Shown here piece by piece: positions 22,608 to 64,000 of a stretch of DNA of 64,000 nt. Numbering within the stretch: position 1 is the stretch's first letter; each line of letters begins with the position of its first letter. Source of the DNA: Obrimoposthia wandeli (taxonomy: Eukaryota); the NCBI GenBank assembly GCA_977020255.1, contig CDROCS010002357.1, positions 1-64,000 on the forward strand, given 5' to 3'. A model generated the notes under the pieces. The model did no database searches. It saw only the letters and a program-made list of their open reading frames with translations, and was not told the DNA's origin. The position numbers and the translations under genes are program-made.

Positions 22608-24158
22608 TCAATCACCCATGGTATCAAAAAAGTTGACCAAAGATTCTATTGGCATAGGTTTTGCGTAGTGGTAGCCTTGGCTGAAGCCTATATCTAAGCT
22701 GATGATTTTGTTTTGTATTTGTTGAGTTTCTACCCCTTCTGCAACAACGTCTAAATTCATTTCTTTCGCCAGCTTAATTATGTGCTCAACTAAATTTAAA
22801 TGGAGCTGGTTTTCTAGCATATACAGGATGAAACCTTGATCGACTTTAAGATAGTCAACTTGAAGGTCTTTAAGCTGCTCTAGATTTGAATAGCCGGTAC
22901 CAAAATCGTCAATCGCTATTTTTACGCCTTTTTCATGAAGTTTACTAATAGCTTGGTTAACGGTGAGGTGATCGCCTTCTTGTTGCTCTGTAATTTCCAC
23001 TACCATATAAGCGTGTTCTTCAAAGCTTAACTGCTGCTCAAGAACTTTTTCAATATGTCCGCTGGCTATATCTTCTGGGAAGCTATTAATAGATAGTTTT
23101 ACTTTACCGAAGAGATCAGCTTGTTTGAATTCTTTAATCGCTTGTGCTACTAGTATTTGTGTGAATATTGCTGTTTGTTTGTTCTCAATAACGTGTGATA
23201 AAAAAGGGAATGCGCCGTGAATGACACCTTCTGGATCTTTCCATCTACAAAGAACTTCACAAGAACTTATTGCCTCATTTTTATTGTTAATAATGGGTTG
23301 GTAATAACAAAGTATTTGCTTGGCGTTTAAGCCCCGATAAATTTGTCGATTAAAAGAATAATAATAGCGAATGTAATAACGTGTACAAATATTACTTGAA
23401 AAAAAGAGTAATAGAAGAATTGTGAATACAGTGATAACTAGTAAATAGTTTTTCAATATGTATTCAATTATATCTATTTCATATGTAGCGCAAGTACTCT
23501 CGACATAACAGCTTTGGTATTGCCAGATAAAATTTCGAAACTGGCTGAAATTGGCGGTCGGTTTTTTACTTAAAGCCTGTATGTTTGTATTGCCAATGAC
23601 TTTGAAAAAATGATCTTGATTATAAACAAAGATAGAAATTTCCATCCAGCTAGGCTGTAAGCGTAATATGTTATCGGGTCTGATCAGCGCTTGAAAATTT
23701 CCAAACTTGAGGCGCATTGCCTTGATATCGCCTGGAAAATTGTCAACCGGTTTAAATGTTGTAAACTCAAGTGGGCTAGTGTTGCTAATGACATCTGATA
23801 ACGGCTGCGCAATGGGTTTATCCAAAATCCCTCTGTTAGTACTACACAATAAACTTTGCTCGTTCAAGAAACCGTATTCATGTAGTCGGATTGAATGAAA
23901 TTCAGCTAATCGCATAGCCTCTAAAATTACTTTACTACATGTTTTCTGTTTAAAACGTTGATTTAGAGGAGCTAAATAGTTAACGATATCATTGTTAATA
24001 AATATTGAATTTTGTTTTAGCTTTTCTTCAAATATGGAAGCTTTATTAATCCATTGATTGTGGAGAAATGCGTAATTAAGGCTTAAAAAAATTAGCAATA
24101 AAACACTGAAAGCGATAATTGATAAGAAACGCTCAGTTTTGATAGTGTTTTTGAACAT
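22608..24158 (-). CDS. CSS-motif membrane EAL c-di-GMP phosphodiesterase
   Basis: Two TM segments; periplasmic Cys pair (KTCS, LLCST); EVL variant of EAL, IDDFGTGYSNL, LKVDQ, VAEGVE, QGYHY. Confidence 0.85.
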   Translation of the reverse strand: MFKNTIKTERFLSIIAFSVLLLIFLSLNYAFLHNQWINKASIFEEKLKQNSIFINNDIVNYLAPLNQRFKQKTCSKVILEAMRLAEFHSIRLHEYGFLNEQSLLCSTNRGILDKPIAQPLSDVISNTSPLEFTTFKPVDNFPGDIKAMRLKFGNFQALIRPDNILRLQPSWMEISIFVYNQDHFFKVIGNTNIQALSKKPTANFSQFRNFIWQYQSCYVESTCATYEIDIIEYILKNYLLVITVFTILLLLFFSSNICTRYYIRYYYSFNRQIYRGLNAKQILCYYQPIINNKNEAISSCEVLCRWKDPEGVIHGAFPFLSHVIENKQTAIFTQILVAQAIKEFKQADLFGKVKLSINSFPEDIASGHIEKVLEQQLSFEEHAYMVVEITEQQEGDHLTVNQAISKLHEKGVKIAIDDFGTGYSNLEQLKDLQVDYLKVDQGFILYMLENQLHLNLVEHIIKLAKEMNLDVVAEGVETQQIQNKIISLDIGFSQGYHYAKPMPIESLVNFFDTMGD

Positions 24159-46910: not shown

Positions 46911-48089
46911 TTATCTTTCAAGTGTTAGCGCAATACCCATGCCACCACCAATGCACAAGGTGGCTAAGCCCTTTTGAGCATTACAGCGTTTCATTTCATG
47001 TAGTAGGGAGACTAAAATACGACACCCCGAGGCGCCAATAGGATGGCCAAGTGCTATGGCTCCACCGTTTACGTTCACTTTAGCTGTATCCCAAGCGAGT
47101 TCTTTGTTGACGCTAAGTGCTTGTGCGGCGAATGCTTCATTTGCTTCAATTAAATCTAGATCAGCAACTTCCCAGCCCGATTTTTTAAGAGCCTTTAATG
47201 ATGCAGAAATAGGGCCGGTTCCCATAATACTTGGATCTACGCCGCTGGCAGCGTAGCCGCGAATAGTCGCGAGTACGGGTAAACCTAATTGCTCGGCTTT
47301 TTGCGCGCTACAGACAACAACGACTGCAGCACCATCATTTAAGGTAGAGCTATTACCGGCAGTAACAGTACCATCTTTTTTAAAGGCGGGGCGTAGTTTT
47401 TTCAAAGCATCAGTGCTGCAACCAAATCTTGGCTGTTCATCTTGCGCAAAGATGATAGGATCACCGCGACGCTGTGCAATGCTAATTGGAATTATTTCAT
47501 CACTAAATTTACCGGCTTTAATTGCAGCTTCTGCTTTGTTCTGCGAATCCGTGGCAAATTGATCTTGTTCTTCACGCGTTAACTGGTATTTATCAACAAT
47601 GTTTTCAGCAGTGATGCCCATATGATAATCGTTAAAAGCATCCCAGAGCCCATCGACAATCATCGTGTCCTTTAAAGCCCAGTCTCCCATTGTTTTACCT
47701 TTGCGAGATTGTGGTAGAACATGAGCGGCTAAACTCATATTCTCTTGCCCGCCGGCAATGATCATGTGCGCGTCACCACAGGCAATGGCTTGAGCTGCCA
47801 TTTGTACCGCTTTGAGACCCGAGCCACACACTTTATTGATGGTTAATGCTTCTACGCTGGTACTTAGCCCAGCTTTTATGGCACTTTGGCGAGCAGGGTT
47901 TTGTCCGCAGCCAGCAGTTAGTACTTGTCCAAGAATAACTTCATCAATATGTTCAGGGGAGATAGCGTGTTTAGCGAGTAAGTCTTTGATTACCGCCGCA
48001 CCAATTTCAGTGGCAGAAGTGGATGATAATGCACCATTAAAAGCGCCAATTGCTGATCGTCCTGCAGCTACAATAACAACATCTTTCAT
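46911..48089 (-). CDS. atoB: acetyl-CoA C-acetyltransferase (biosynthetic thiolase)
   Basis: NKVCGSGL, NEAFAAQ, GGAIALGHPIGASG, LCIGGGMG. Confidence 0.9.
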   Translation of the reverse strand: MKDVVIVAAGRSAIGAFNGALSSTSATEIGAAVIKDLLAKHAISPEHIDEVILGQVLTAGCGQNPARQSAIKAGLSTSVEALTINKVCGSGLKAVQMAAQAIACGDAHMIIAGGQENMSLAAHVLPQSRKGKTMGDWALKDTMIVDGLWDAFNDYHMGITAENIVDKYQLTREEQDQFATDSQNKAEAAIKAGKFSDEIIPISIAQRRGDPIIFAQDEQPRFGCSTDALKKLRPAFKKDGTVTAGNSSTLNDGAAVVVVCSAQKAEQLGLPVLATIRGYAASGVDPSIMGTGPISASLKALKKSGWEVADLDLIEANEAFAAQALSVNKELAWDTAKVNVNGGAIALGHPIGASGCRILVSLLHEMKRCNAQKGLATLCIGGGMGIALTLER

Positions 48090-58803: not shown

Positions 58804-59310
58804 TTATTTTAAATCAAGTTTTTGTAGAGTACCTGCGGGGCAATGCTGAAGAAGATATGTAATGGTTTTACCTTGAATTGAAAGGTTATTATTCAGCTCT
58901 GCAAGGGGGACTAAAACAAAATTTCTATCAGTCATACTGGCATGGGGGATCGTCAATCTTATTGTATCTATTATTGATTCTCCAAATAGTAGTATGTCTA
59001 AATCTAACGTCCTTGCCCCCCAGCGCTCTATTCGAACTCGCTGGTGAGTATTTTCGACGTGTTGCAATTGATCAAGTAATTGTTCAGAGCTTAAGGTAGT
59101 CTTTAAACAAACCACTGCATTGATATAATCATCTTGCCCAGGAGGTCCCACAGGTGCTGATTGGTAGATAGAGGAAGCCTCAACGAATTGGCAATCGTTG
59201 AGGCTTTTTATTTCTTGGATAGCATTTTGAACATGGCTAATTGGATTGTCTAAATTACTACCCAAGCCTATGTAACAAGTGACTTCATTATTATTTGTTT
59301 CTAGGGTCAT
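58804..59310 (-). CDS. folK: 2-amino-4-hydroxy-6-hydroxymethyldihydropteridine diphosphokinase
   Basis: YIGLGSNL, DYINAV, RWGARTLDLDILL, IPH; overlaps the end of pcnB. Confidence 0.95.
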   Translation of the reverse strand: MTLETNNNEVTCYIGLGSNLDNPISHVQNAIQEIKSLNDCQFVEASSIYQSAPVGPPGQDDYINAVVCLKTTLSSEQLLDQLQHVENTHQRVRIERWGARTLDLDILLFGESIIDTIRLTIPHASMTDRNFVLVPLAELNNNLSIQGKTITYLLQHCPAGTLQKLDLK

Positions 59311-61249
59311 TTTTAGCGCGGCCACGACGAGGTTTTCTAATTGAGGTTTGTGGGTGTTCTATAACGCTGTCTTGAGGTGCTTTTAACATATCAGATGTAG
59401 CTAAATCAACTTTCTGCTCTTGTTGCGTTTCAGTAGTTGAATTACTTGTTTGCTGAGCTGCTTGTTGGAGAGAGCTCTCTTGCGTTAAAGAACTTTCTTC
59501 ATGACTCTTTGAAACTTGAGGAATACTTTCTGATTTATGTGCAGGCAGTTGCTGATTAGCGATAGCCTCTGATCTAGCTTTATTCGTTGGCTCTTTTAAT
59601 TGAGTAGGAGCTTTTTTAACTCTTGGCTTTCTAGCTTTTTTTTCTGCTGATTCCAGAATTTTAGTATCAGTGTTTTCAGATAGTATATCTTTGCTTGGTG
59701 CATTCTCTGTTGATGTTTTAGCACGAGGTTTTGCTTTCACCTGTTCAACCACATCGAACTTCTCGAAAACAGCTTTTTCTGTGATTTTTTTAGGTGCAGG
59801 TTTTTTCTTTTTAGCTGCTGCCTTTTGGTTGTTTAATTCGTTGCAAAGTTGCTCTCTTTGAGTTTCGCTAGCCGATTGGTAATCTGTCCACCAAGTGCTG
59901 ATCCCCCCCAGGTCTTCGCCGCTTTTCTCTCTTAGAACTAATAAGTCATAAGCAGCTCTAAATCTAGGGTGTTCAACTAATTGATCGGCTTTGGTACAAG
60001 GACGACGAGTTAAGCGAAATTGTAACTCCCATATCTCTCTAATGTTGGTAGAAAAGCGTTTAGGAATAGAAGTGCGTTTAACTTGTTCTAAAATAACTTT
60101 AGAAGCTACTTCATGCAGAGCTGTTAAAGGAGGAATTCTCTTGTTGGCTAACACTCTATCTAGTTGTTCTTGAACAGTGGGCCATAAAAGTACTGCATAT
60201 AAGAAACCAGGGCTAACGCTTTTGCGCTGCTTTATTCTTCTATCTGTGTTTTTAAGTACATTAAGTATTAATTCATTAGCATTTTTAGTATTTAAGTCTA
60301 AAGCTTGTGCTGTCTGCGGCAAAATAGTTTCAAGTAATTTGTATTCACGCAATAGTTTTAGAGATTCATTGCCATGTCCTGATTGTAAAAGCTTTAATAC
60401 TTCATCAAATAAACGTGCCGGTGCTATATCATAAAGCAAGGTACAAAGCTCTTTGATAGGCTTCGCTGTTTGTTCTTCTATGGAAAAATCAAGTTTAGCG
60501 GCAAAGCGGACGGCTCTTAGCATTCGTACAGGGTCTTCTCTGTATCGCTCGTTAGGTTCACCTATCATACGAATTTGACGTGCACTGATATCTTCATAGC
60601 CATTGGTGAAATCATAAATACAGTGGCTTGCAACATCATAGTAAAGCGCATTTATTGTAAAATCCCTACGCAGAGCATCTTGATCTATAGTGCCATAAAC
60701 GTTATCACGCAATATCATGCCTGAATCAGCTTGTTTGGCGCTATGCTCAGAAGAATCATTATCTTGAGGGTGGTTGTCGTGCGAAGCTCTAAAGGTTGCT
60801 ACTTCTATAAGTTCTCTGCCAAAGCGTACGTGAAGTAATTTAAAGCGGCGGCCAATTAAACGTGAACGATTAAATACTTTATGCGCTTGTTCAGGGTGAG
60901 CGCCGGTCGTGACATCAAAATCTTTTGGACGCTTATTTAGTAATAAATCGCGCACACATCCGCCAACTAAATATGATTCGTAGTTAGCGCGATGTAAATC
61001 TTTTACAATTTTAACCGCATTTTTTTCGATATCACGAAAATTGATTTGATGAATCGATTCTGTAATGACAGTTGCATTAATTGATTTTGCCCTGGCGTTA
61101 TCGATGTAAGGGTTTTCAACTAACAAATTTTTCAGTGTTTTTGCTGGCGTCTTTTGATTAGCCTGAATAGGTTTTGGATTGGATTTATTATTATCCAAAT
61201 TATCAGGCTTTGAAAATAACTTTTTAATATTTTTGAAAAAATTAGGCAT
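59291..61249 (-). CDS. pcnB: poly(A) polymerase I with a long low-complexity C-terminal tail
   Basis: GGCVRDLLL, KDFDVTT, PAP signature LIGRRF, RRDFTINAL, EDPVRMLRA; pcnB-folK-panB-panC order. Confidence 0.95.
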   Translation of the reverse strand: MPNFFKNIKKLFSKPDNLDNNKSNPKPIQANQKTPAKTLKNLLVENPYIDNARAKSINATVITESIHQINFRDIEKNAVKIVKDLHRANYESYLVGGCVRDLLLNKRPKDFDVTTGAHPEQAHKVFNRSRLIGRRFKLLHVRFGRELIEVATFRASHDNHPQDNDSSEHSAKQADSGMILRDNVYGTIDQDALRRDFTINALYYDVASHCIYDFTNGYEDISARQIRMIGEPNERYREDPVRMLRAVRFAAKLDFSIEEQTAKPIKELCTLLYDIAPARLFDEVLKLLQSGHGNESLKLLREYKLLETILPQTAQALDLNTKNANELILNVLKNTDRRIKQRKSVSPGFLYAVLLWPTVQEQLDRVLANKRIPPLTALHEVASKVILEQVKRTSIPKRFSTNIREIWELQFRLTRRPCTKADQLVEHPRFRAAYDLLVLREKSGEDLGGISTWWTDYQSASETQREQLCNELNNQKAAAKKKKPAPKKITEKAVFEKFDVVEQVKAKPRAKTSTENAPSKDILSENTDTKILESAEKKARKPRVKKAPTQLKEPTNKARSEAIANQQLPAHKSESIPQVSKSHEESSLTQESSLQQAAQQTSNSTTETQQEQKVDLATSDMLKAPQDSVIEHPQTSIRKPRRGRAKNDPRNK

Positions 61250-61379
61250 TTTGTGTTTGTCAGATCAATGAATGTGATTTTGGGAGTGCATGATAACATT
61301 GATGAACAATAAGCATAAGGAAATTTTTATGAAGATAAAGATAAGATCAATGTAACATGATTTAAGGCGGCAGTAAGTT

Positions 61380-61592
61380 GTAAAAATCCTAAGAAGTTAG
61401 ATCTAATAGGACTTTAAATAAAAGTCCTAGCTGTAAGAGTAGTAGGGCAACGTCTTTGTTTTTATTATTATAGTTGCCTGAAGGAATGCTTTATTAGTCT
61501 TGTAATTATTTTTATTTTAAGACACTTGTATTTGCTATAAACCAATTTTTATTTTTATAAATGGTAAGTTAGCAGTGTTTATTATTTTTATA
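61380..61592 (-). ncRNA. candidate CrcZ-like Hfq/Crc-sequestering sRNA (boundaries approximate)
   Basis: Between cbrB and pcnB; downstream of a sigma54 promoter; four AANAANAA motifs; 3' hairpin at 61407-61429; no ORF. Confidence 0.7.
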
Positions 61593-61603
61593 TTCTAACT
61601 AGA

Positions 61604-61618
61604 GCATAACTTGTGCCA
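61604..61618 (-). promoter_or_regulatory. sigma54 (-24/-12) promoter
   Basis: Minus strand TGGCACAAGTTATGC: GG-N10-GC with TGGCAC at -24. Confidence 0.8.
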
Positions 61619-61679
61619 TATAAGTTAAGCTATTGTTATATAAAAAATTATTTTTATTTAATTTAAAGTTAATTCAAAG

Positions 61680-61754
61680 TGTTACCAATAGGCGTGCAAA
61701 AGTGTTACTTAAAGTATTGTTACTATTTTGAATAACAATACTTTAAGTAACACT
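61680..61754. promoter_or_regulatory. CbrB-type upstream activator sequences (TGTTAC/GTAACA) within a 22-bp perfect inverted repeat
   Basis: TGTTAC at 61680, 61703 and 61718; GTAACA at 61747; arms 61701-61722 and 61733-61754; about 90-160 bp upstream of the predicted start. Confidence 0.7.
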
Positions 61755-62597
61755 CTACGTAATATAAAAATAATAGTAGTAAAGCCTCTAATTTAATTAT
61801 TACGGAGTGTTAGTTTCTTAGTATTTAGAAAACCGCTAGCTTTCATAAGACATCATTAAGTTTAGGGTTCTTAAATGGTGTAACTCAGTTTTTTTAATGG
61901 AAGAGCGGGTGTTCGTAAAGCAGTAGCCTGTGAAGGTATCAGCTACTAGATAGGTAGTTTCATTATTATTTACCGTATAGTGTAAAATTTGGTGGCTTAT
62001 CTAGCGCTGAATAGCGAAATATGATCAAGTCATTGATGGGATGTCAGTTCATAGTATTGTGTTGAAATATTCATCAAATTTTTAAGTTTATGTACTGTCA
62101 CTTATAGGTTTCCAGTTACTGTCATAAAGTTTTTATTGTGTATTCAAACTTTATCTTAAAGTAGATATTCAAAAGATGAATTTATAACAATGATATGGAA
62201 ATTATCGAATTTGAATTTCCAATTGACGATATCCATATGGTAGTAAGAGCACGAGTGGCACGAAAATAGTACTATCTTATATGATGTAAGTAACTGAAAT
62301 AATTTACAGCTTATAACCCATATTTAAAAGATTATATGTGAGGAGGAGAGCTGTGGGTTTAACATTATTATATGGGAGCTATCGATAAGGAATGAAGATG
62401 TTATGCGATAAATATGTTCAAGATCAGTTTCTGATCATGAACAAAAGTTAATCAAATAGTACAGGGCTGAGGATTGTAAAAAAACTCAGTCGTCTGCTGC
62501 CAAGTTTTTATATGATAATATCTAGTAGTGCGTTTATTAGATAAATACGATTTTTCTTTTTAAAGCAATTATAAAATCGGTGTATAGCAAGGGCTGG

Positions 62598-63998
62598 TTA
62601 AGCTTTCGTCTTTCGAGGAATACCCAGTTTTTGGCGTCTTTCCCAAAGACATTTACGGCTCACGCCAAGTCGCTTAGCTAGTTCTGTTTCATTTAAGCTA
62701 TGTTGATGCTCTAAAACAAAGCGCTGGAAATAATCATTAAGTGACAAGCCTCCAGTTTGCTGCGATGGGGTGTTTTGAACTGGTTTTATTCTTCGTTCTA
62801 TATAGCTAATCACGGCTTCGTTTAAATTGTTGTTTTCTATATCGAGGCCCAATAGCTCACTAGTGATTTGTCCTGTTTCACACAGTATGATTGCTCTTTC
62901 GATAGCGTTTTCTAGTTCTCGTACATTACCGGGCCAGCTGTAACGTTTCAAAGTTAATAGTGCGCTTTCACTAAAAAATGCAGGATCACATTTTAAACGT
63001 ACACAAGATCTTTCAAGGAAGGTGTTGGCTAATGATAATATATCTTCACGTCTCTCGCGTAGCGGCGGCATACAGATATCCATAACATATAAGCGGTAGT
63101 ATAAATCTTCTCTGAATTGTCCGTTTTGAGCAAGCTTTTTTAGATTTCTATGAGTGGCGGCGACTAACCGAACATCGACTTTTTGTTGTTCAATAGAGCC
63201 TACTCGGCGCACTTCGCTTTCCTGTAGGAATCTTAATAGTCGCGCTTGAGCCTCTAAAGGTAGCTCGCCAATTTCATCAAGAAATAGAGTCCCGCCATTC
63301 GCTGCCTCAATTAAGCCGATTTTTTGATGTGTAGCGCCAGTAAATGCCCCTTTTTCATGTCCAAATAATTCAGATTCAATCAAGTTATCAGGGATAGCGG
63401 CACAGTTAACAGATATCATCGGAGCATTGTAACGTGCACTTTTTTCGTGAATTGATCTTGCTGCTAATTCTTTACCCGTCCCTGATTCGCCCAATATGAG
63501 GACTGTCGTATCCGTTTTGGATACTTTTTCTATACGTTTATAGAGGTCAACCATCACAGTACTTTTGCCAATGAAATGGTTTTTTACAGGATTAGCACTA
63601 TTGAGTATTTCTTTTTTGTGTTTTGGGGATGGGTTGATTTCTAGTGGGGCTTTAGGGTTGCTAGAAATGATTTGCTGAATCGTCTTTAGCATTTCATCAT
63701 GATCGAAAGGCTTGGCGATATAATCAGTAGCGCCAAGTTTCATGACTTCAACCGCAGATTTCATACTTGCGTAACTTGTCATTATTAGTACAGGGGTGTC
63801 ATCTGCTTTTTCAATTAAATCGGTGCCTGGTGCCCCCGGCAATCTCAAATCGCTAATAATTAAATCGTAATCAGCTAAATTGTACAGTTTTAACGCTTCA
63901 TCTACAGACCCACAATCGTCAACACTAAATCGACTGTTAATTAAAAAGCGTTTAAGAGCAAAGCGAATAACTTGCTCATCTTCAACAATCAGAATATG
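62598..63998 (-). CDS. cbrB: CbrB sigma54-dependent response regulator, 5'-truncated by the window edge
   Basis: N-terminus HILIVEDEQVIR...SDLRLPGAPGT; GESGTGKE, GAFTGA; C-terminal LSL.DYFQ.FVLEHQ..L.ETELA..LGVSRKCLWERRQ.LGIPR is CbrB-specific as recalled; synteny with pcnB. Confidence 0.9.
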   Translation of the reverse strand, partial: HILIVEDEQVIRFALKRFLINSRFSVDDCGSVDEALKLYNLADYDLIISDLRLPGAPGTDLIEKADDTPVLIMTSYASMKSAVEVMKLGATDYIAKPFDHDEMLKTIQQIISSNPKAPLEINPSPKHKKEILNSANPVKNHFIGKSTVMVDLYKRIEKVSKTDTTVLILGESGTGKELAARSIHEKSARYNAPMISVNCAAIPDNLIESELFGHEKGAFTGATHQKIGLIEAANGGTLFLDEIGELPLEAQARLLRFLQESEVRRVGSIEQQKVDVRLVAATHRNLKKLAQNGQFREDLYYRLYVMDICMPPLRERREDILSLANTFLERSCVRLKCDPAFFSESALLTLKRYSWPGNVRELENAIERAIILCETGQITSELLGLDIENNNLNEAVISYIERRIKPVQNTPSQQTGGLSLNDYFQRFVLEHQHSLNETELAKRLGVSRKCLWERRQKLGIPRKTKA

Positions 63999-64000
63999 AC

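What the first reader, a model, noticed from the sequence alone, without database searches (positions are those of the whole stretch)
61380..61618. CrcZ-like sigma54 sRNA between cbrB and pcnB in an AT-rich, apparently non-Pseudomonas genome
Seen on the minus strand: sigma54 promoter TGGCACAAGTTATGC (61618-61604), then a non-coding stretch with AAAAATAATAAA (61589-61578), AAAAATAAAAAA (~61557-61546), AAAATAAAAATAA (61518-61506) and ATAATAATAAAAACAAAG (61471-61454, presented in the loop of a GGCAAC/GTTGCC stem), then a 9-bp hairpin (61407-61429). Established: in Pseudomonas and Azotobacter, CrcZ lies exactly between cbrB and pcnB, is transcribed by sigma54/CbrB and titrates Hfq/Crc through AANAANAA motifs. 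Inference: a compact (~200 nt versus ~400 nt) sequence-divergent functional analogue that covariance models would probably miss, extending CbrAB-CrcZ catabolite repression to another lineage. crc, hfq and cbrA are not in this window.
Basis: partly seen in the sequence, partly recalled or inferred. Interest (0 to 1): 0.85.

Follow-up and report, generated by a model that had tools for sequence, protein, structure and literature searches.

The report
Compact CrcZ-type Hfq-sponge small RNA
Between the regulator gene cbrB and pcnB, a marine Oceanospirillales bacterium carries a conserved, half-length relative of the Pseudomonas small RNA CrcZ. This suggests that the CbrAB–CrcZ–Hfq/Crc system for choosing carbon sources, described in reviews as unique to Pseudomonadaceae, also exists in this marine family.

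Summary
A sigma54 promoter (61618-61604, minus strand) is followed by four A-rich (ARN)4-5 tracts. One is single-stranded at the 5' end and three sit in the 17-21 nt loops of hairpins.

- **Neighbours:** the upstream genes are a true CbrA (SLC5-STAC domain matches PDB 10ED, E=1e-141) and an NtrC-type CbrB. The downstream gene is pcnB.
- **Promoter region:** it carries TGTTAY/GTAACA CbrB half-sites and an IHF-like site.
- **Conservation:** a covariance model built here finds the RNA in 108 of 121 sampled genomes of the relatives' family. Nearly all 41 loci inspected lie between cbrB and pcnB behind a sigma54 promoter. All 20 stem pairs covary.
- **Rfam:** CrcZ/CrcY/CrcX models do not detect it.
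- **Partners:** crc and rpoN lie on other contigs attributed to this organism. Its hfq was not found in this assembly, but both close relatives checked have one.

No RNA-seq was available. The 3' end is undefined and no intrinsic terminator precedes pcnB.

Verdict: a real, previously unannotated, compact variant of the CrcZ kind of Hfq/Crc-titrating sRNA. The scan's first readers noted CrcZ-like sRNAs on other contigs of this same multi-organism assembly.

The parts
62598..64000 (-). cbrB, a sigma54-dependent response regulator. The gene runs on to contig position 64255 (468 aa). cbrA (977 aa) lies just upstream, outside the window, at contig 64011-66944.
   Evidence: REC + Sigma54_activat + AAA-lid domains. 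Residues 3-580 of CbrA match PDB 10ED, the Pseudomonas CbrXA SLC5-STAC domain, at E=1.4e-141, and PAS/HisKA/HATPase domains follow (PMC13022988).
61680..61752 (-). Upstream activating sequence: TGTTAC (61752-61747), TGTTAT (61737-61732), then GTAACA at 61723-61718, 61708-61703 and 61685-61680. These are nested palindromic CbrB-type half-sites.
   Evidence: Read directly. The composite pattern is unique in the window with 0 expected. 4 of the window's 43 GTAACA hexamers lie here. The same hexamers sit at -60 to -190 in relatives and in canonical CrcZ loci. Published consensus: TGTTAC-N12-14-GTAACA-N15-19-GTAACA (PMC8871633).
61626..61638 (-). IHF-like site TAACAATAGCTTA (WAWCAA-N4-TTR) abutting the -24 element.
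   Evidence: It occurs at the same position (-19 or -20 from TGGCA) in 12 of 33 promoters scanned. This is inference only.
61604..61618 (-). Sigma54 (RpoN) promoter TGGCAC-N5-ATGC. The predicted transcription start is about 61594-61592.
   Evidence: TGGCAY-N5-nTGC is conserved 350-680 nt upstream of pcnB in all seven Oceanospirillales relatives (L010 under a relaxed pattern) and in front of almost every covariance-model hit.
61430..61597 (-). Conserved body of the small RNA (covariance-model match). The 3' end is not defined and may extend to about 61400 or beyond.
   Evidence: R1 139 bits, R2 121 bits. This was the only match to either model in the 64-kb window, and R1 gave one match per genome in four of the five relatives' genomes searched.
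61578..61589 (-). Module 1: single-stranded (ARN)4 tract, AAAAATAATAAA, right after the start site.
   Evidence: The equivalent tract is ACAACAACAA in GC-richer relatives.
61533..61574 (-). Hairpin 2: stems TGCTA/TAGCA and ACCA/TGGT, with a 17-nt loop holding ATAAAAATAAAAA (module 2).
   Evidence: Fold. The inner stem is 77% paired and all its pairs covary. The loop core ATAAAAATAA is invariant in 8 of 8 sequences.
61497..61523 (-). Hairpin 3: GTCTT/AAGAC, with a 17-nt loop holding AATAAAAATAAT (module 3).
   Evidence: Fold. The helix is 93.5% paired across 37 sequences, with compensatory forms such as GCCTC/GAGGC and TGCC/GGCA.
61446..61478 (-). Hairpin 4: GGCAAC/GTTGCC, with a 21-nt loop holding AATAATAAAAACAAA (module 4).
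   Evidence: RNAalifold predicts it unaided. It is 88.8% paired and all 6 pairs covary.
61407..61429 (-). 9-bp AT-rich hairpin TAGGACTTT/AAAGTCCTA. It is a possible but unproven 3' structure.
   Evidence: It is present. No U-tract follows it, the terminator scan does not call it, and it is absent from the closest relative, L015/L021.
61290..61318 (-). pcnB's own sigma70-type promoter: TTATGC-N17-TATCAT with an extended -10, TGnTATCAT.
   Evidence: TGnTAT(C/T)AT lies 48-49 nt before the pcnB ATG in the window and six near relatives, and recurs in three more distant ones.
59291..61249 (-). pcnB, poly(A) polymerase I, 652 aa with a long low-complexity C-terminal tail. folK, panB and panC follow.
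   Evidence: TIGR01942 at 520 bits; the neighbours are folK, panB and panC.

Best explanation
This is a CbrB- and sigma54-dependent small RNA of about 165-215 nt. It is the positional orthologue of Pseudomonas CrcZ in a Nitrincolaceae-type Oceanospirillales bacterium.

Proposed mechanism:
1. When preferred carbon runs low, CbrA phosphorylates CbrB.
2. CbrB binds the TGTTAY/GTAACA sites at 61752-61680 and, probably helped by IHF bending, activates RpoN-RNA polymerase at 61618-61604.
3. The transcript displays four runs of 4-5 A-R-N triplets. One is single-stranded at the 5' end and three sit in 17-21 nt hairpin loops.
4. Each run is the kind of sequence that the distal face of an Hfq hexamer binds and that Crc clamps.
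5. By soaking up Hfq/Crc, the RNA would release catabolic mRNAs from translational repression.

Shown here: the sequence elements, gene context, conservation, covariation, and the presence of cbrA, cbrB, crc and rpoN.
Inferred: transcription, CbrB dependence, Hfq/Crc binding and the physiological output.
For: **Context.** The order is cbrA (PDB 10ED match, E=1.4e-141), cbrB, the sRNA, then pcnB. This is the arrangement described for crcZ (PMC8871633).

**Promoter.** The sigma54 element is conserved in all relatives. The UAS is built from the published CbrB half-sites and is unique in the window. [quoted passage not shown] In Azotobacter CrcZ the values are 13, 25 and -125/-145 (PMC5429807).

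**The RNA is under selection.**
- On an unfitted MAFFT alignment, 75.8% of cells pair against 23-47% when partners are slid, and 9 pairs change on both sides against 2.9 expected.
- On 37 model-aligned sequences, 79% pair against 28-46% slid. All 20 pairs show double changes, and the covariation score is 0.54 against 0.15 or less.
- Loop cores ATAAAAATAA and AAYAAAAATAA are invariant while their stems change.
- 29 of 38 homologues have exactly four (ARN)>=4 runs.

**Distribution.** Model R2 hits 108 of 121 genomes of the relatives' family. Of the 41 loci inspected, 35 have cbrB and pcnB on either side; four more show pcnB only, one sits on a contig too short to tell, and one (L095) lies elsewhere.

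**Link to CrcZ.** R1 aligns from its first position to the 5' end of sub-threshold Rfam CrcZ loci (E=2e-4 to 1e-3) and weakly to Pseudomonas-type CrcZ (E=0.03). All of those loci also sit between cbrB and pcnB.

**Partners.**
- The Crc orthologue on contig C5705 is 257 aa and aligns without gaps to P. aeruginosa Crc 4JG3 at E=5.6e-78, against 3e-59 for the best true nuclease. It is flanked by rph and pyrE.
- A separate ExoIII exists in the closest relative.
- rpoN lies on contig C2469.
- hfq is present in both close relatives checked.

**pcnB has its own promoter.** A conserved extended -10 promoter precedes it.
Against: - No expression data: no RNA run was listed for the window or for the Osedax-symbiont locus.
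- No intrinsic terminator lies between the RNA and pcnB, either here or in most relatives. A discrete 3' end is therefore unproven.
- Rfam CrcZ, CrcY and CrcX do not match even at E<=10.
- The hfq of this organism was not found in the assembly at the expected identity.
- crc and rpoN are assigned to the same organism only by matching divergence from relative G002: 87-90% nucleotide identity, against 84% for the window.
- The F-to-R1 spacing of the CbrB half-sites (N8 or N23) differs from the Pseudomonas N12-14, and it varies among relatives.
- A-rich tracts are cheap in DNA that is 25% GC.
Confidence: 0.72

Rival explanations
1. The sigma54 promoter makes a long A-rich 5' leader that is co-transcribed with pcnB. 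This would place poly(A) polymerase under CbrB/RpoN and Hfq control, and there would be no free-standing sRNA.
For: No intrinsic terminator lies in the 345 nt between the predicted start and the pcnB ATG, in the window or in most relatives. The hairpin at 61429-61407 lacks a U-tract and is not conserved.
Against: - pcnB has its own conserved extended -10 promoter 48-49 nt before the ATG.
- In several relatives the promoter-plus-RNA unit is duplicated in tandem, 2-3 times, each copy with its own sigma54 promoter. One copy lies away from pcnB (L095). This is how discrete sRNA genes behave.
- The 120 nt after the conserved body is C-rich and G-poor in 18 of 18 loci, with C/G of 1.3-7.4, as expected for Rho-dependent termination.
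- In Pseudomonas and Azotobacter the same arrangement yields a separate CrcZ (PMC8871633, PMC5429807).
Confidence: 0.12
2. It is a real CbrB/sigma54 sRNA that works differently. It might be a base-pairing riboregulator using its invariant A-rich loops, or a sponge for Hfq alone or for another A-rich-RNA-binding protein, without Crc.
For: The loops are invariant at sequence level, which also fits base-pairing to U-rich targets. Crc is assigned by similarity and synteny only.
Against: - Four repeated, interchangeable ARN tracts whose number is conserved are typical of protein titration, not of seed pairing.
- A Crc orthologue with about 55% gap-free identity to P. aeruginosa Crc is retained beside a separate ExoIII.
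Confidence: 0.1
3. It is chance: AT-rich spacer DNA with a fortuitous sigma54-like hexamer pair.
For: Within the window alone, the promoter pattern and the 11-mer are not significantly enriched.
Against: The position, promoter, loop sequences and covarying stems are conserved across more than 100 genomes.
Confidence: 0.02

Closest known systems
CrcZ of Pseudomonas and Azotobacter (Rfam RF01675)
   Same: - The gene lies between cbrB and pcnB.
- It has an RpoN promoter with an upstream TGTTAC/GTAACA CbrB site.
- The first A-rich motif starts about 15 nt after the -12 element.
- Several AAnAAnAA-type motifs are displayed in loops.
- crc, rpoN and cbrA are present in the genome.
- My model aligns to the 5' end of CrcZ loci.
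   Different: - About 165-215 nt against about 400 nt.
- Four motifs against five or six.
- No match to RF01675 at E<=10.
- No recognisable intrinsic terminator.
- Different spacing of the first CbrB half-sites.
- The host is Oceanospirillaceae in NCBI taxonomy, not Pseudomonadaceae.
CrcY (P. putida, Azotobacter) and CrcX (P. syringae)
   Same: They are paralogous CbrB/RpoN-driven A-rich sponge sRNAs. Relatives of the window's organism likewise carry 2-5 copies, often in tandem.
   Different: Only one copy was seen in the 64-kb window. R1 gave one hit per genome in four of the five relatives' genomes searched, none of them the window's organism. The Rfam search found no CrcY or CrcX match.
Sub-threshold CrcZ-like RNAs in other families of GTDB order Pseudomonadales (L066-L074)
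   Same: Where the flanks are on the locus, they lie between cbrB and pcnB; L066 and L074 show pcnB only. All sit behind a sigma54 promoter. They share the motif CAATAAAAATAA and are intermediate in GC content, 44-59%.
   Different: They are full length against the 398-position Rfam model (47-111 bits, four of them over the cut-off), while the window's RNA gives no score at all. They carry a conserved GCAAACTGATTTTTTTGGA block that is absent here.
CsrB/RsmY/RsmZ protein-sponge sRNAs
   Same: The concept is the same: a two-component system drives an sRNA whose repeated loop motifs titrate a global translational repressor.
   Different: They use GGA motifs that bind CsrA/RsmA, have sigma70 promoters activated by GacA/UvrY, and are evolutionarily unrelated.

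Membership tests
CrcZ (Rfam RF01675) | Scores over the family's covariance-model threshold (95 bits) | tested here: not met
   No hit at the gathering score in the window. No CrcZ, CrcY or CrcX hit at E<=10 in 61200-62700. None at E<=1 in 14 relatives' loci.
CrcZ-type sRNA (biological definition) | Gene located between cbrB and pcnB | tested here: met
   cbrB ends at 62598 and pcnB starts at 61249. Most of the 41 relatives' loci inspected show the same flanks.
CrcZ-type sRNA (biological definition) | RpoN (-24/-12) promoter with upstream CbrB binding sites | tested here: met
   This is met at sequence level only. The promoter is TGGCAC-N5-ATGC. The UAS is TGTTAY-N23-GTAACA-N17-GTAACA, unique in the window, and is conserved. 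The R1-R2 spacing fits the published N15-19, but the F-R1 spacing does not fit N12-14 (PMC8871633).
CrcZ-type sRNA (biological definition) | Several unpaired A-rich (AAnAAnAA / ARN) Hfq-binding motifs | tested here: met
   There are four (ARN)4-5 runs, three of them in hairpin loops. The number and position are conserved in 29 of 38 homologues.
CrcZ-type sRNA (biological definition) | A discrete transcript of about 400 nt ending at a terminator | tested here: not met
   The conserved body is about 165 nt. No intrinsic terminator was found. No RNA data were available.
CrcZ-type sRNA (biological definition) | Binds and titrates Hfq/Crc; expression depends on CbrB and RpoN | not testable with these tools
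   This needs EMSA, mutants and Northern blots.
CbrAB-CrcZ-Hfq/Crc catabolite-repression system | CbrA transceptor kinase (SLC5-STAC + PAS + kinase) next to CbrB | tested here: met
   A 977-aa ORF lies directly upstream of cbrB. Its residues 3-580 match PDB 10ED at E=1.4e-141.
CbrAB-CrcZ-Hfq/Crc catabolite-repression system | Crc protein encoded by the same organism | tested here: met
   Contig C5705 carries a 257-aa protein that matches 4JG3 at E=5.6e-78, with rph and pyrE as neighbours. It is 99% identical to Crc of the closest relative. It is assigned to the same organism by similar divergence only.
CbrAB-CrcZ-Hfq/Crc catabolite-repression system | Hfq encoded by the same organism | tested here: inconclusive
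   None of the six hfq genes in the assembly is closer than 78% to the hfq locus of relative G002. Relatives G001 and G002 each have one hfq.
CbrAB-CrcZ-Hfq/Crc catabolite-repression system | RpoN encoded by the same organism | tested here: met
   Contig C2469 is 90% identical at nucleotide level to the rpoN locus of G002.

The most novel reading that the evidence does not exclude
The RNA has no terminator of its own. It is a CbrB/sigma54-driven Hfq-binding module whose transcripts either stop by Rho or read through into pcnB, depending on Hfq occupancy of the four A-rich tracts. In that case carbon status would directly set poly(A)-polymerase levels, and so global RNA turnover. No such coupling has been described for CrcZ.
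Probability: 0.1. Interest if true: 0.7.

Novelty: new variant of a known kind. Interest (0 to 1): 0.5.

Why it matters
Current reviews call CbrAB and its sRNAs "unique to" or "exclusive of" the Pseudomonadaceae (PMC8871633, PMC6296734). Four searches of the paper library found no report of a CrcZ-type RNA outside Pseudomonas and Azotobacter.

Here the whole module is present in a family of marine heterotrophs that includes the bone-degrading Osedax symbionts. The module comprises the CbrA transceptor, CbrB, a CbrB-site/sigma54 promoter, an A-rich sponge RNA and Crc. The RNA itself is found in 108 of 121 sampled genomes of that family.

This has four consequences:
- It gives annotators a missing RNA family.
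- It offers a natural minimal CrcZ (four modules, about 170 nt) for structural work on Hfq/Crc assemblies.
- It suggests that reverse catabolite repression of the Pseudomonas type shapes substrate choice in abundant marine and symbiotic bacteria.
- It shows a sequence continuum from this form through intermediate genomes to canonical CrcZ.

Tried and rejected
- **Rfam.** Searches at the gathering score and at E<=10 gave only spurious microRNA-like hits on the palindromic CbrB site at 61686-61764. There was nothing in the relatives' loci.
- **Expression data.** No RNA run was listed for the window or for the Osedax-symbiont locus.
- **Terminators.** The consensus scan found none. My own hairpin-plus-U-tract scan found none in 13 of 16 loci.
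- **Single-window statistics.** The promoter pattern and the strict A-rich 11-mer are not significant on their own.
- **hfq of this organism.** It was sought by Pfam model and by DNA of the relative's miaA-hfq-hflX locus and was not found.
- **Model R2 on the 1.35-Gb assembly.** It failed twice. A promoter-plus-motif pattern search replaced it: 6 hits against 1 in the control, at least two of them on other contigs and clearly CrcZ-like.
- **"One extra helical turn" in the CbrB site.** I considered this reading of N23-24 against N12-14 and dropped it as a general claim, because relatives show N8, N11, N15 and N24.
- **IS200-like relic as part of the RNA.** I considered whether the ~550-nt repeat upstream belongs to the RNA. 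It is a decayed IS200-like element.

Full report
**1. What is in the sequence**

On the minus strand the order is cbrB, a 1350-nt spacer, then pcnB-folK-panB-panC.
- cbrB has its stop at 62598. The ORF continues past the window end to contig position 64255 and encodes 468 aa with REC, sigma54-interaction and AAA-lid domains.
- pcnB spans 61249-59291.

- the promoter TGGCAC-N5-ATGC at 61618-61604;
- four A-rich tracts;
- the GGCAAC/GTTGCC stem around the fourth tract;
- the 9-bp hairpin at 61429-61407.

The thermodynamic fold adds two hairpins that put tracts 2 and 3 in 17-nt loops, with z = -2.45 against shuffles. Each tract is a run of 4-5 consecutive A-R-N triplets.

**2. Is it more than chance?**

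Inside this one window the signals are mixed.
- The sigma54 pattern occurs 3 times against 0.8 expected.
- A strict 11-mer is not enriched.
- Five of the 20 AANAANAANAA matches on both strands fall within 134 nt.
- The composite upstream pattern TGTTAY-N23-GTAACA-N17-GTAACA is unique, with zero occurrences in 100 shuffles.

The strong evidence is comparative. A PcnB-based scan of species-representative genomes returned eight loci with a strong PcnB match. Seven are Oceanospirillales: Osedax symbiont Rs2, three "Nitrincolaceae" MAGs, a complete MAG chromosome, and a MAG whose PcnB is 82% identical. The eighth (L016, an unclassified gammaproteobacterium with 50% PcnB identity) had no convincing promoter. 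All seven have a sigma54 promoter 350-680 nt upstream of pcnB, followed at once by the same kind of A-rich tracts, with TGTTAC/GTAACA clusters further upstream.

**3. A conserved, structured RNA**

An 8-sequence MAFFT alignment shows invariant loop cores, ATAAAAATAA and AAYAAAAATA, next to variable flanks. RNAalifold finds hairpin 4 unaided.

| Test | Alignment | Cells paired | Slid controls | Pairs changed on both sides | Covariation score |
|---|---|---|---|---|---|
| | unfitted MAFFT, 7 sequences | 75.8% | 23-47% | 9 (2.9 expected) | 0.26 (slid 0.12 or less) |
| | model-aligned, 19 sequences | 79.7% | 31-51% | all 20 | 0.45 (slid 0.12 or less) |
| | model-aligned, 37 distinct sequences | 79.1% | 28-46% | all 20 | 0.54 (slid 0.15 or less) |

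Model-fitted alignments lean towards the structure they were fitted to. The unfitted test and the slid controls both point the same way. Hairpin 3 changes from GTCTT/AAGAC to GCCTC/GAGGC or TGCC/GGCA while its loop stays the same. Of 38 homologues, 29 have exactly four (ARN)>=4 runs, at matching positions.

**4. Distribution**

- Model R1, built from 7 sequences, gave one hit per genome in four of the five relatives' genomes searched.
- In the relatives' GTDB family, R1 hit 18 of 121 genomes.
- The second-round model R2 hit 108 of 121.
- I inspected 41 of these loci. In 35, cbrB and pcnB lie on either side. Four more show pcnB only within the fetched stretch, one sits on a contig too short to tell, and one (L095) lies away from both genes. 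In 37 of the 41 a sigma54 promoter lies directly in front of the hit.
- Several genomes carry two or three tandem units, each with its own promoter.
- In a 151-genome sample of the GTDB order, R2 hit 8 genomes.

**5. Relation to CrcZ**

Rfam does not see the RNA. There is no hit at the gathering score, no CrcZ, CrcY or CrcX hit at E<=10, and nothing in 14 relatives' loci.

In the same order-level sample, RF01675 passed its threshold in 7 genomes and gave significant sub-threshold hits in others. I checked the 12 best loci. Ten lie between cbrB and pcnB and the other two show pcnB only; all 12 sit behind a sigma54 promoter, and their GC content ranges from 44 to 65%.

R1 aligns from its first position to the 5' ends of those loci. 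E-values are 2e-4 to 1e-3 for the intermediate genomes and 0.03 for a Pseudomonas-type CrcZ. This is a sequence continuum at one conserved genomic position. I therefore read the window's RNA as a divergent, shortened orthologue rather than an independent analogue.

**6. Promoter architecture**

The published CbrB consensus is TGTTAC-N12-14-GTAACA-N15-19-GTAACA (PMC8871633). The window has five such hexamers between 61752 and 61680.
- The R1-R2 spacing is N17, which is within the published range.
- The F-R1 spacing is N8 or N23, which is outside it.
- Relatives show N8, N11, N15 and N24.

In Azotobacter CrcZ the -12 and -24 elements lie 13 and 25 nt before the first A-rich motif, and the CbrB sites lie at -125 and -145 (PMC5429807). 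Here the figures are 15, 27 and about -90 to -165. An IHF-like WAWCAA-N4-TTR site abuts the -24 element in 12 of 33 promoters. Its role is inference only.

**7. Partners**

- **cbrA.** The ORF directly upstream of cbrB is 977 aa. Residues 3-580 match PDB 10ED at E=1.4e-141, which is the Pseudomonas CbrXA SLC5-STAC structure (PMC13022988). PAS, HisKA and HATPase domains follow. It is a true CbrA.
- **The assembly.** It is 1.35 Gb in 6912 contigs and holds several bacterial genomes.
- **crc.** Contig C5705 encodes a 257-aa protein that is 99% identical to the Crc candidate of the closest relative. It aligns without gaps to P. aeruginosa Crc 4JG3 at E=5.6e-78, against 3e-59 for the best true exonuclease. 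It sits between rph and pyrE. The relative also has a separate ExoIII.
- **rpoN.** It lies on contig C2469 at 90% nucleotide identity to the relative.
- **Assignment to one organism.** The crc and rpoN contigs are as far from the relative as the window itself is, at 84-90%. That is my only basis for assigning them to one organism.
- **hfq.** The organism's hfq was not found. Both close relatives checked have one.

**8. The 3' end and the main rival**

No intrinsic terminator lies between the RNA and pcnB, here or in most relatives. The hairpin at 61429-61407 lacks a U-tract and is absent from the closest relative. Read-through into pcnB therefore cannot be excluded.

Four observations argue against the RNA being only a leader of pcnB:
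- pcnB has a conserved extended -10 promoter, TGnTAT(C/T)AT, 48-49 nt before its ATG.
- The sRNA unit duplicates as a self-contained module in relatives.
- The 120 nt downstream of the conserved body is C-rich and G-poor in 18 of 18 loci, which fits Rho-dependent termination.
- The same layout in Pseudomonas and Azotobacter gives a separate RNA.

No RNA run was listed for the window or for an Osedax-symbiont locus.

**9. Novelty**

Reviews state that CbrAB and its sRNAs are unique to Pseudomonadaceae (PMC8871633, PMC6296734). Four full-text searches found no CrcZ-type RNA reported outside Pseudomonas and Azotobacter. The closest was a metatranscriptome paper that counts cbrAB reads without any RNA analysis. 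NCBI taxonomy places the nearest named relative in Oceanospirillaceae.

The kind of system is known. The compact four-module form, its family-wide presence and its invisibility to Rfam are new.

First readers of this scan noted CrcZ-like sRNAs on other contigs of the same assembly. My pattern search found at least two clearly CrcZ-like sites, on C1089 and C5781.

**10. Verdict**

This is a real, conserved RNA gene. It is very probably a CbrB/RpoN-driven Hfq/Crc sponge (confidence 0.72). Interest is moderate, because it extends a well-understood system rather than revealing a new one.

Noticed in passing
window 61967-62516: A decayed copy (about 67% identity, no ORF over 26 aa) of an IS200/IS605-type element sits between cbrB and the CbrB-binding sites. 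Intact copies of about 600 nt on contigs C2422, C84 and C2735 have subterminal hairpins and encode a 157-aa Y1 transposase (PF01797, E=1e-40). It explains why the cbrB-to-promoter spacer is about 980 nt here and about 520 nt in the closest relative.
   Followed up: yes
window 61686-61764: The nested palindrome of CbrB half-sites gives spurious sub-threshold matches to a dozen microRNA-precursor models in Rfam. This is a trap for automated annotation.
   Followed up: yes
L038, L030, L077, L081, L087, L090; genomes G010, G079, G109, G023: Many relatives carry two to five copies of the sRNA, usually as tandem units of about 600 nt, each with its own sigma54 promoter, between cbrB and pcnB. One copy (L095) lies away from both genes, like CrcY.
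   Followed up: partly
genomes G170, G217, G257 (order-level sample): Three genomes that appear to lie outside the family (not confirmed) each have 3-4 matches to model R2, dispersed or in tandem. This may be another lineage with multi-copy CrcZ-like RNAs.
   Followed up: no
L066-L074: In genomes of 44-59% GC, Rfam CrcZ gives full-length matches, several of them under the 95-bit gathering score (47-67 bits). Where the flanks are on the locus they lie between cbrB and pcnB. The gathering threshold therefore excludes apparent true homologues outside Pseudomonas.
   Followed up: partly
window 59291-59790 (C-terminal third of pcnB): PcnB is 652 aa against about 425-470 aa for the family models. 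The extra 160 or so residues form a K/Q/S/T-rich low-complexity tail, which five of the Oceanospirillales relatives share along its full length (query residues 1-652 matched).
   Followed up: no
window 22650-22664 (+) and 46930-46944 (-): Two further perfect TGGCAY-N5-TTGC sigma54-type promoter matches. Their context was not examined.
   Followed up: no
G000 contigs C1089:233512-233585 and C5781:64362-64425: Other contigs of the same 1.35-Gb multi-organism assembly carry sigma54 promoters followed by CrcZ-like A-rich tracts. They probably belong to other bacteria in the sample.
   Followed up: partly
G000 as a whole: The assembly that holds the window contains several distinct bacterial genomes: six different hfq genes, at least 16 ExoIII/Crc-like genes, and Mb-sized bacterial contigs. 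"Own genome" searches therefore do not refer to one organism.
   Followed up: partly
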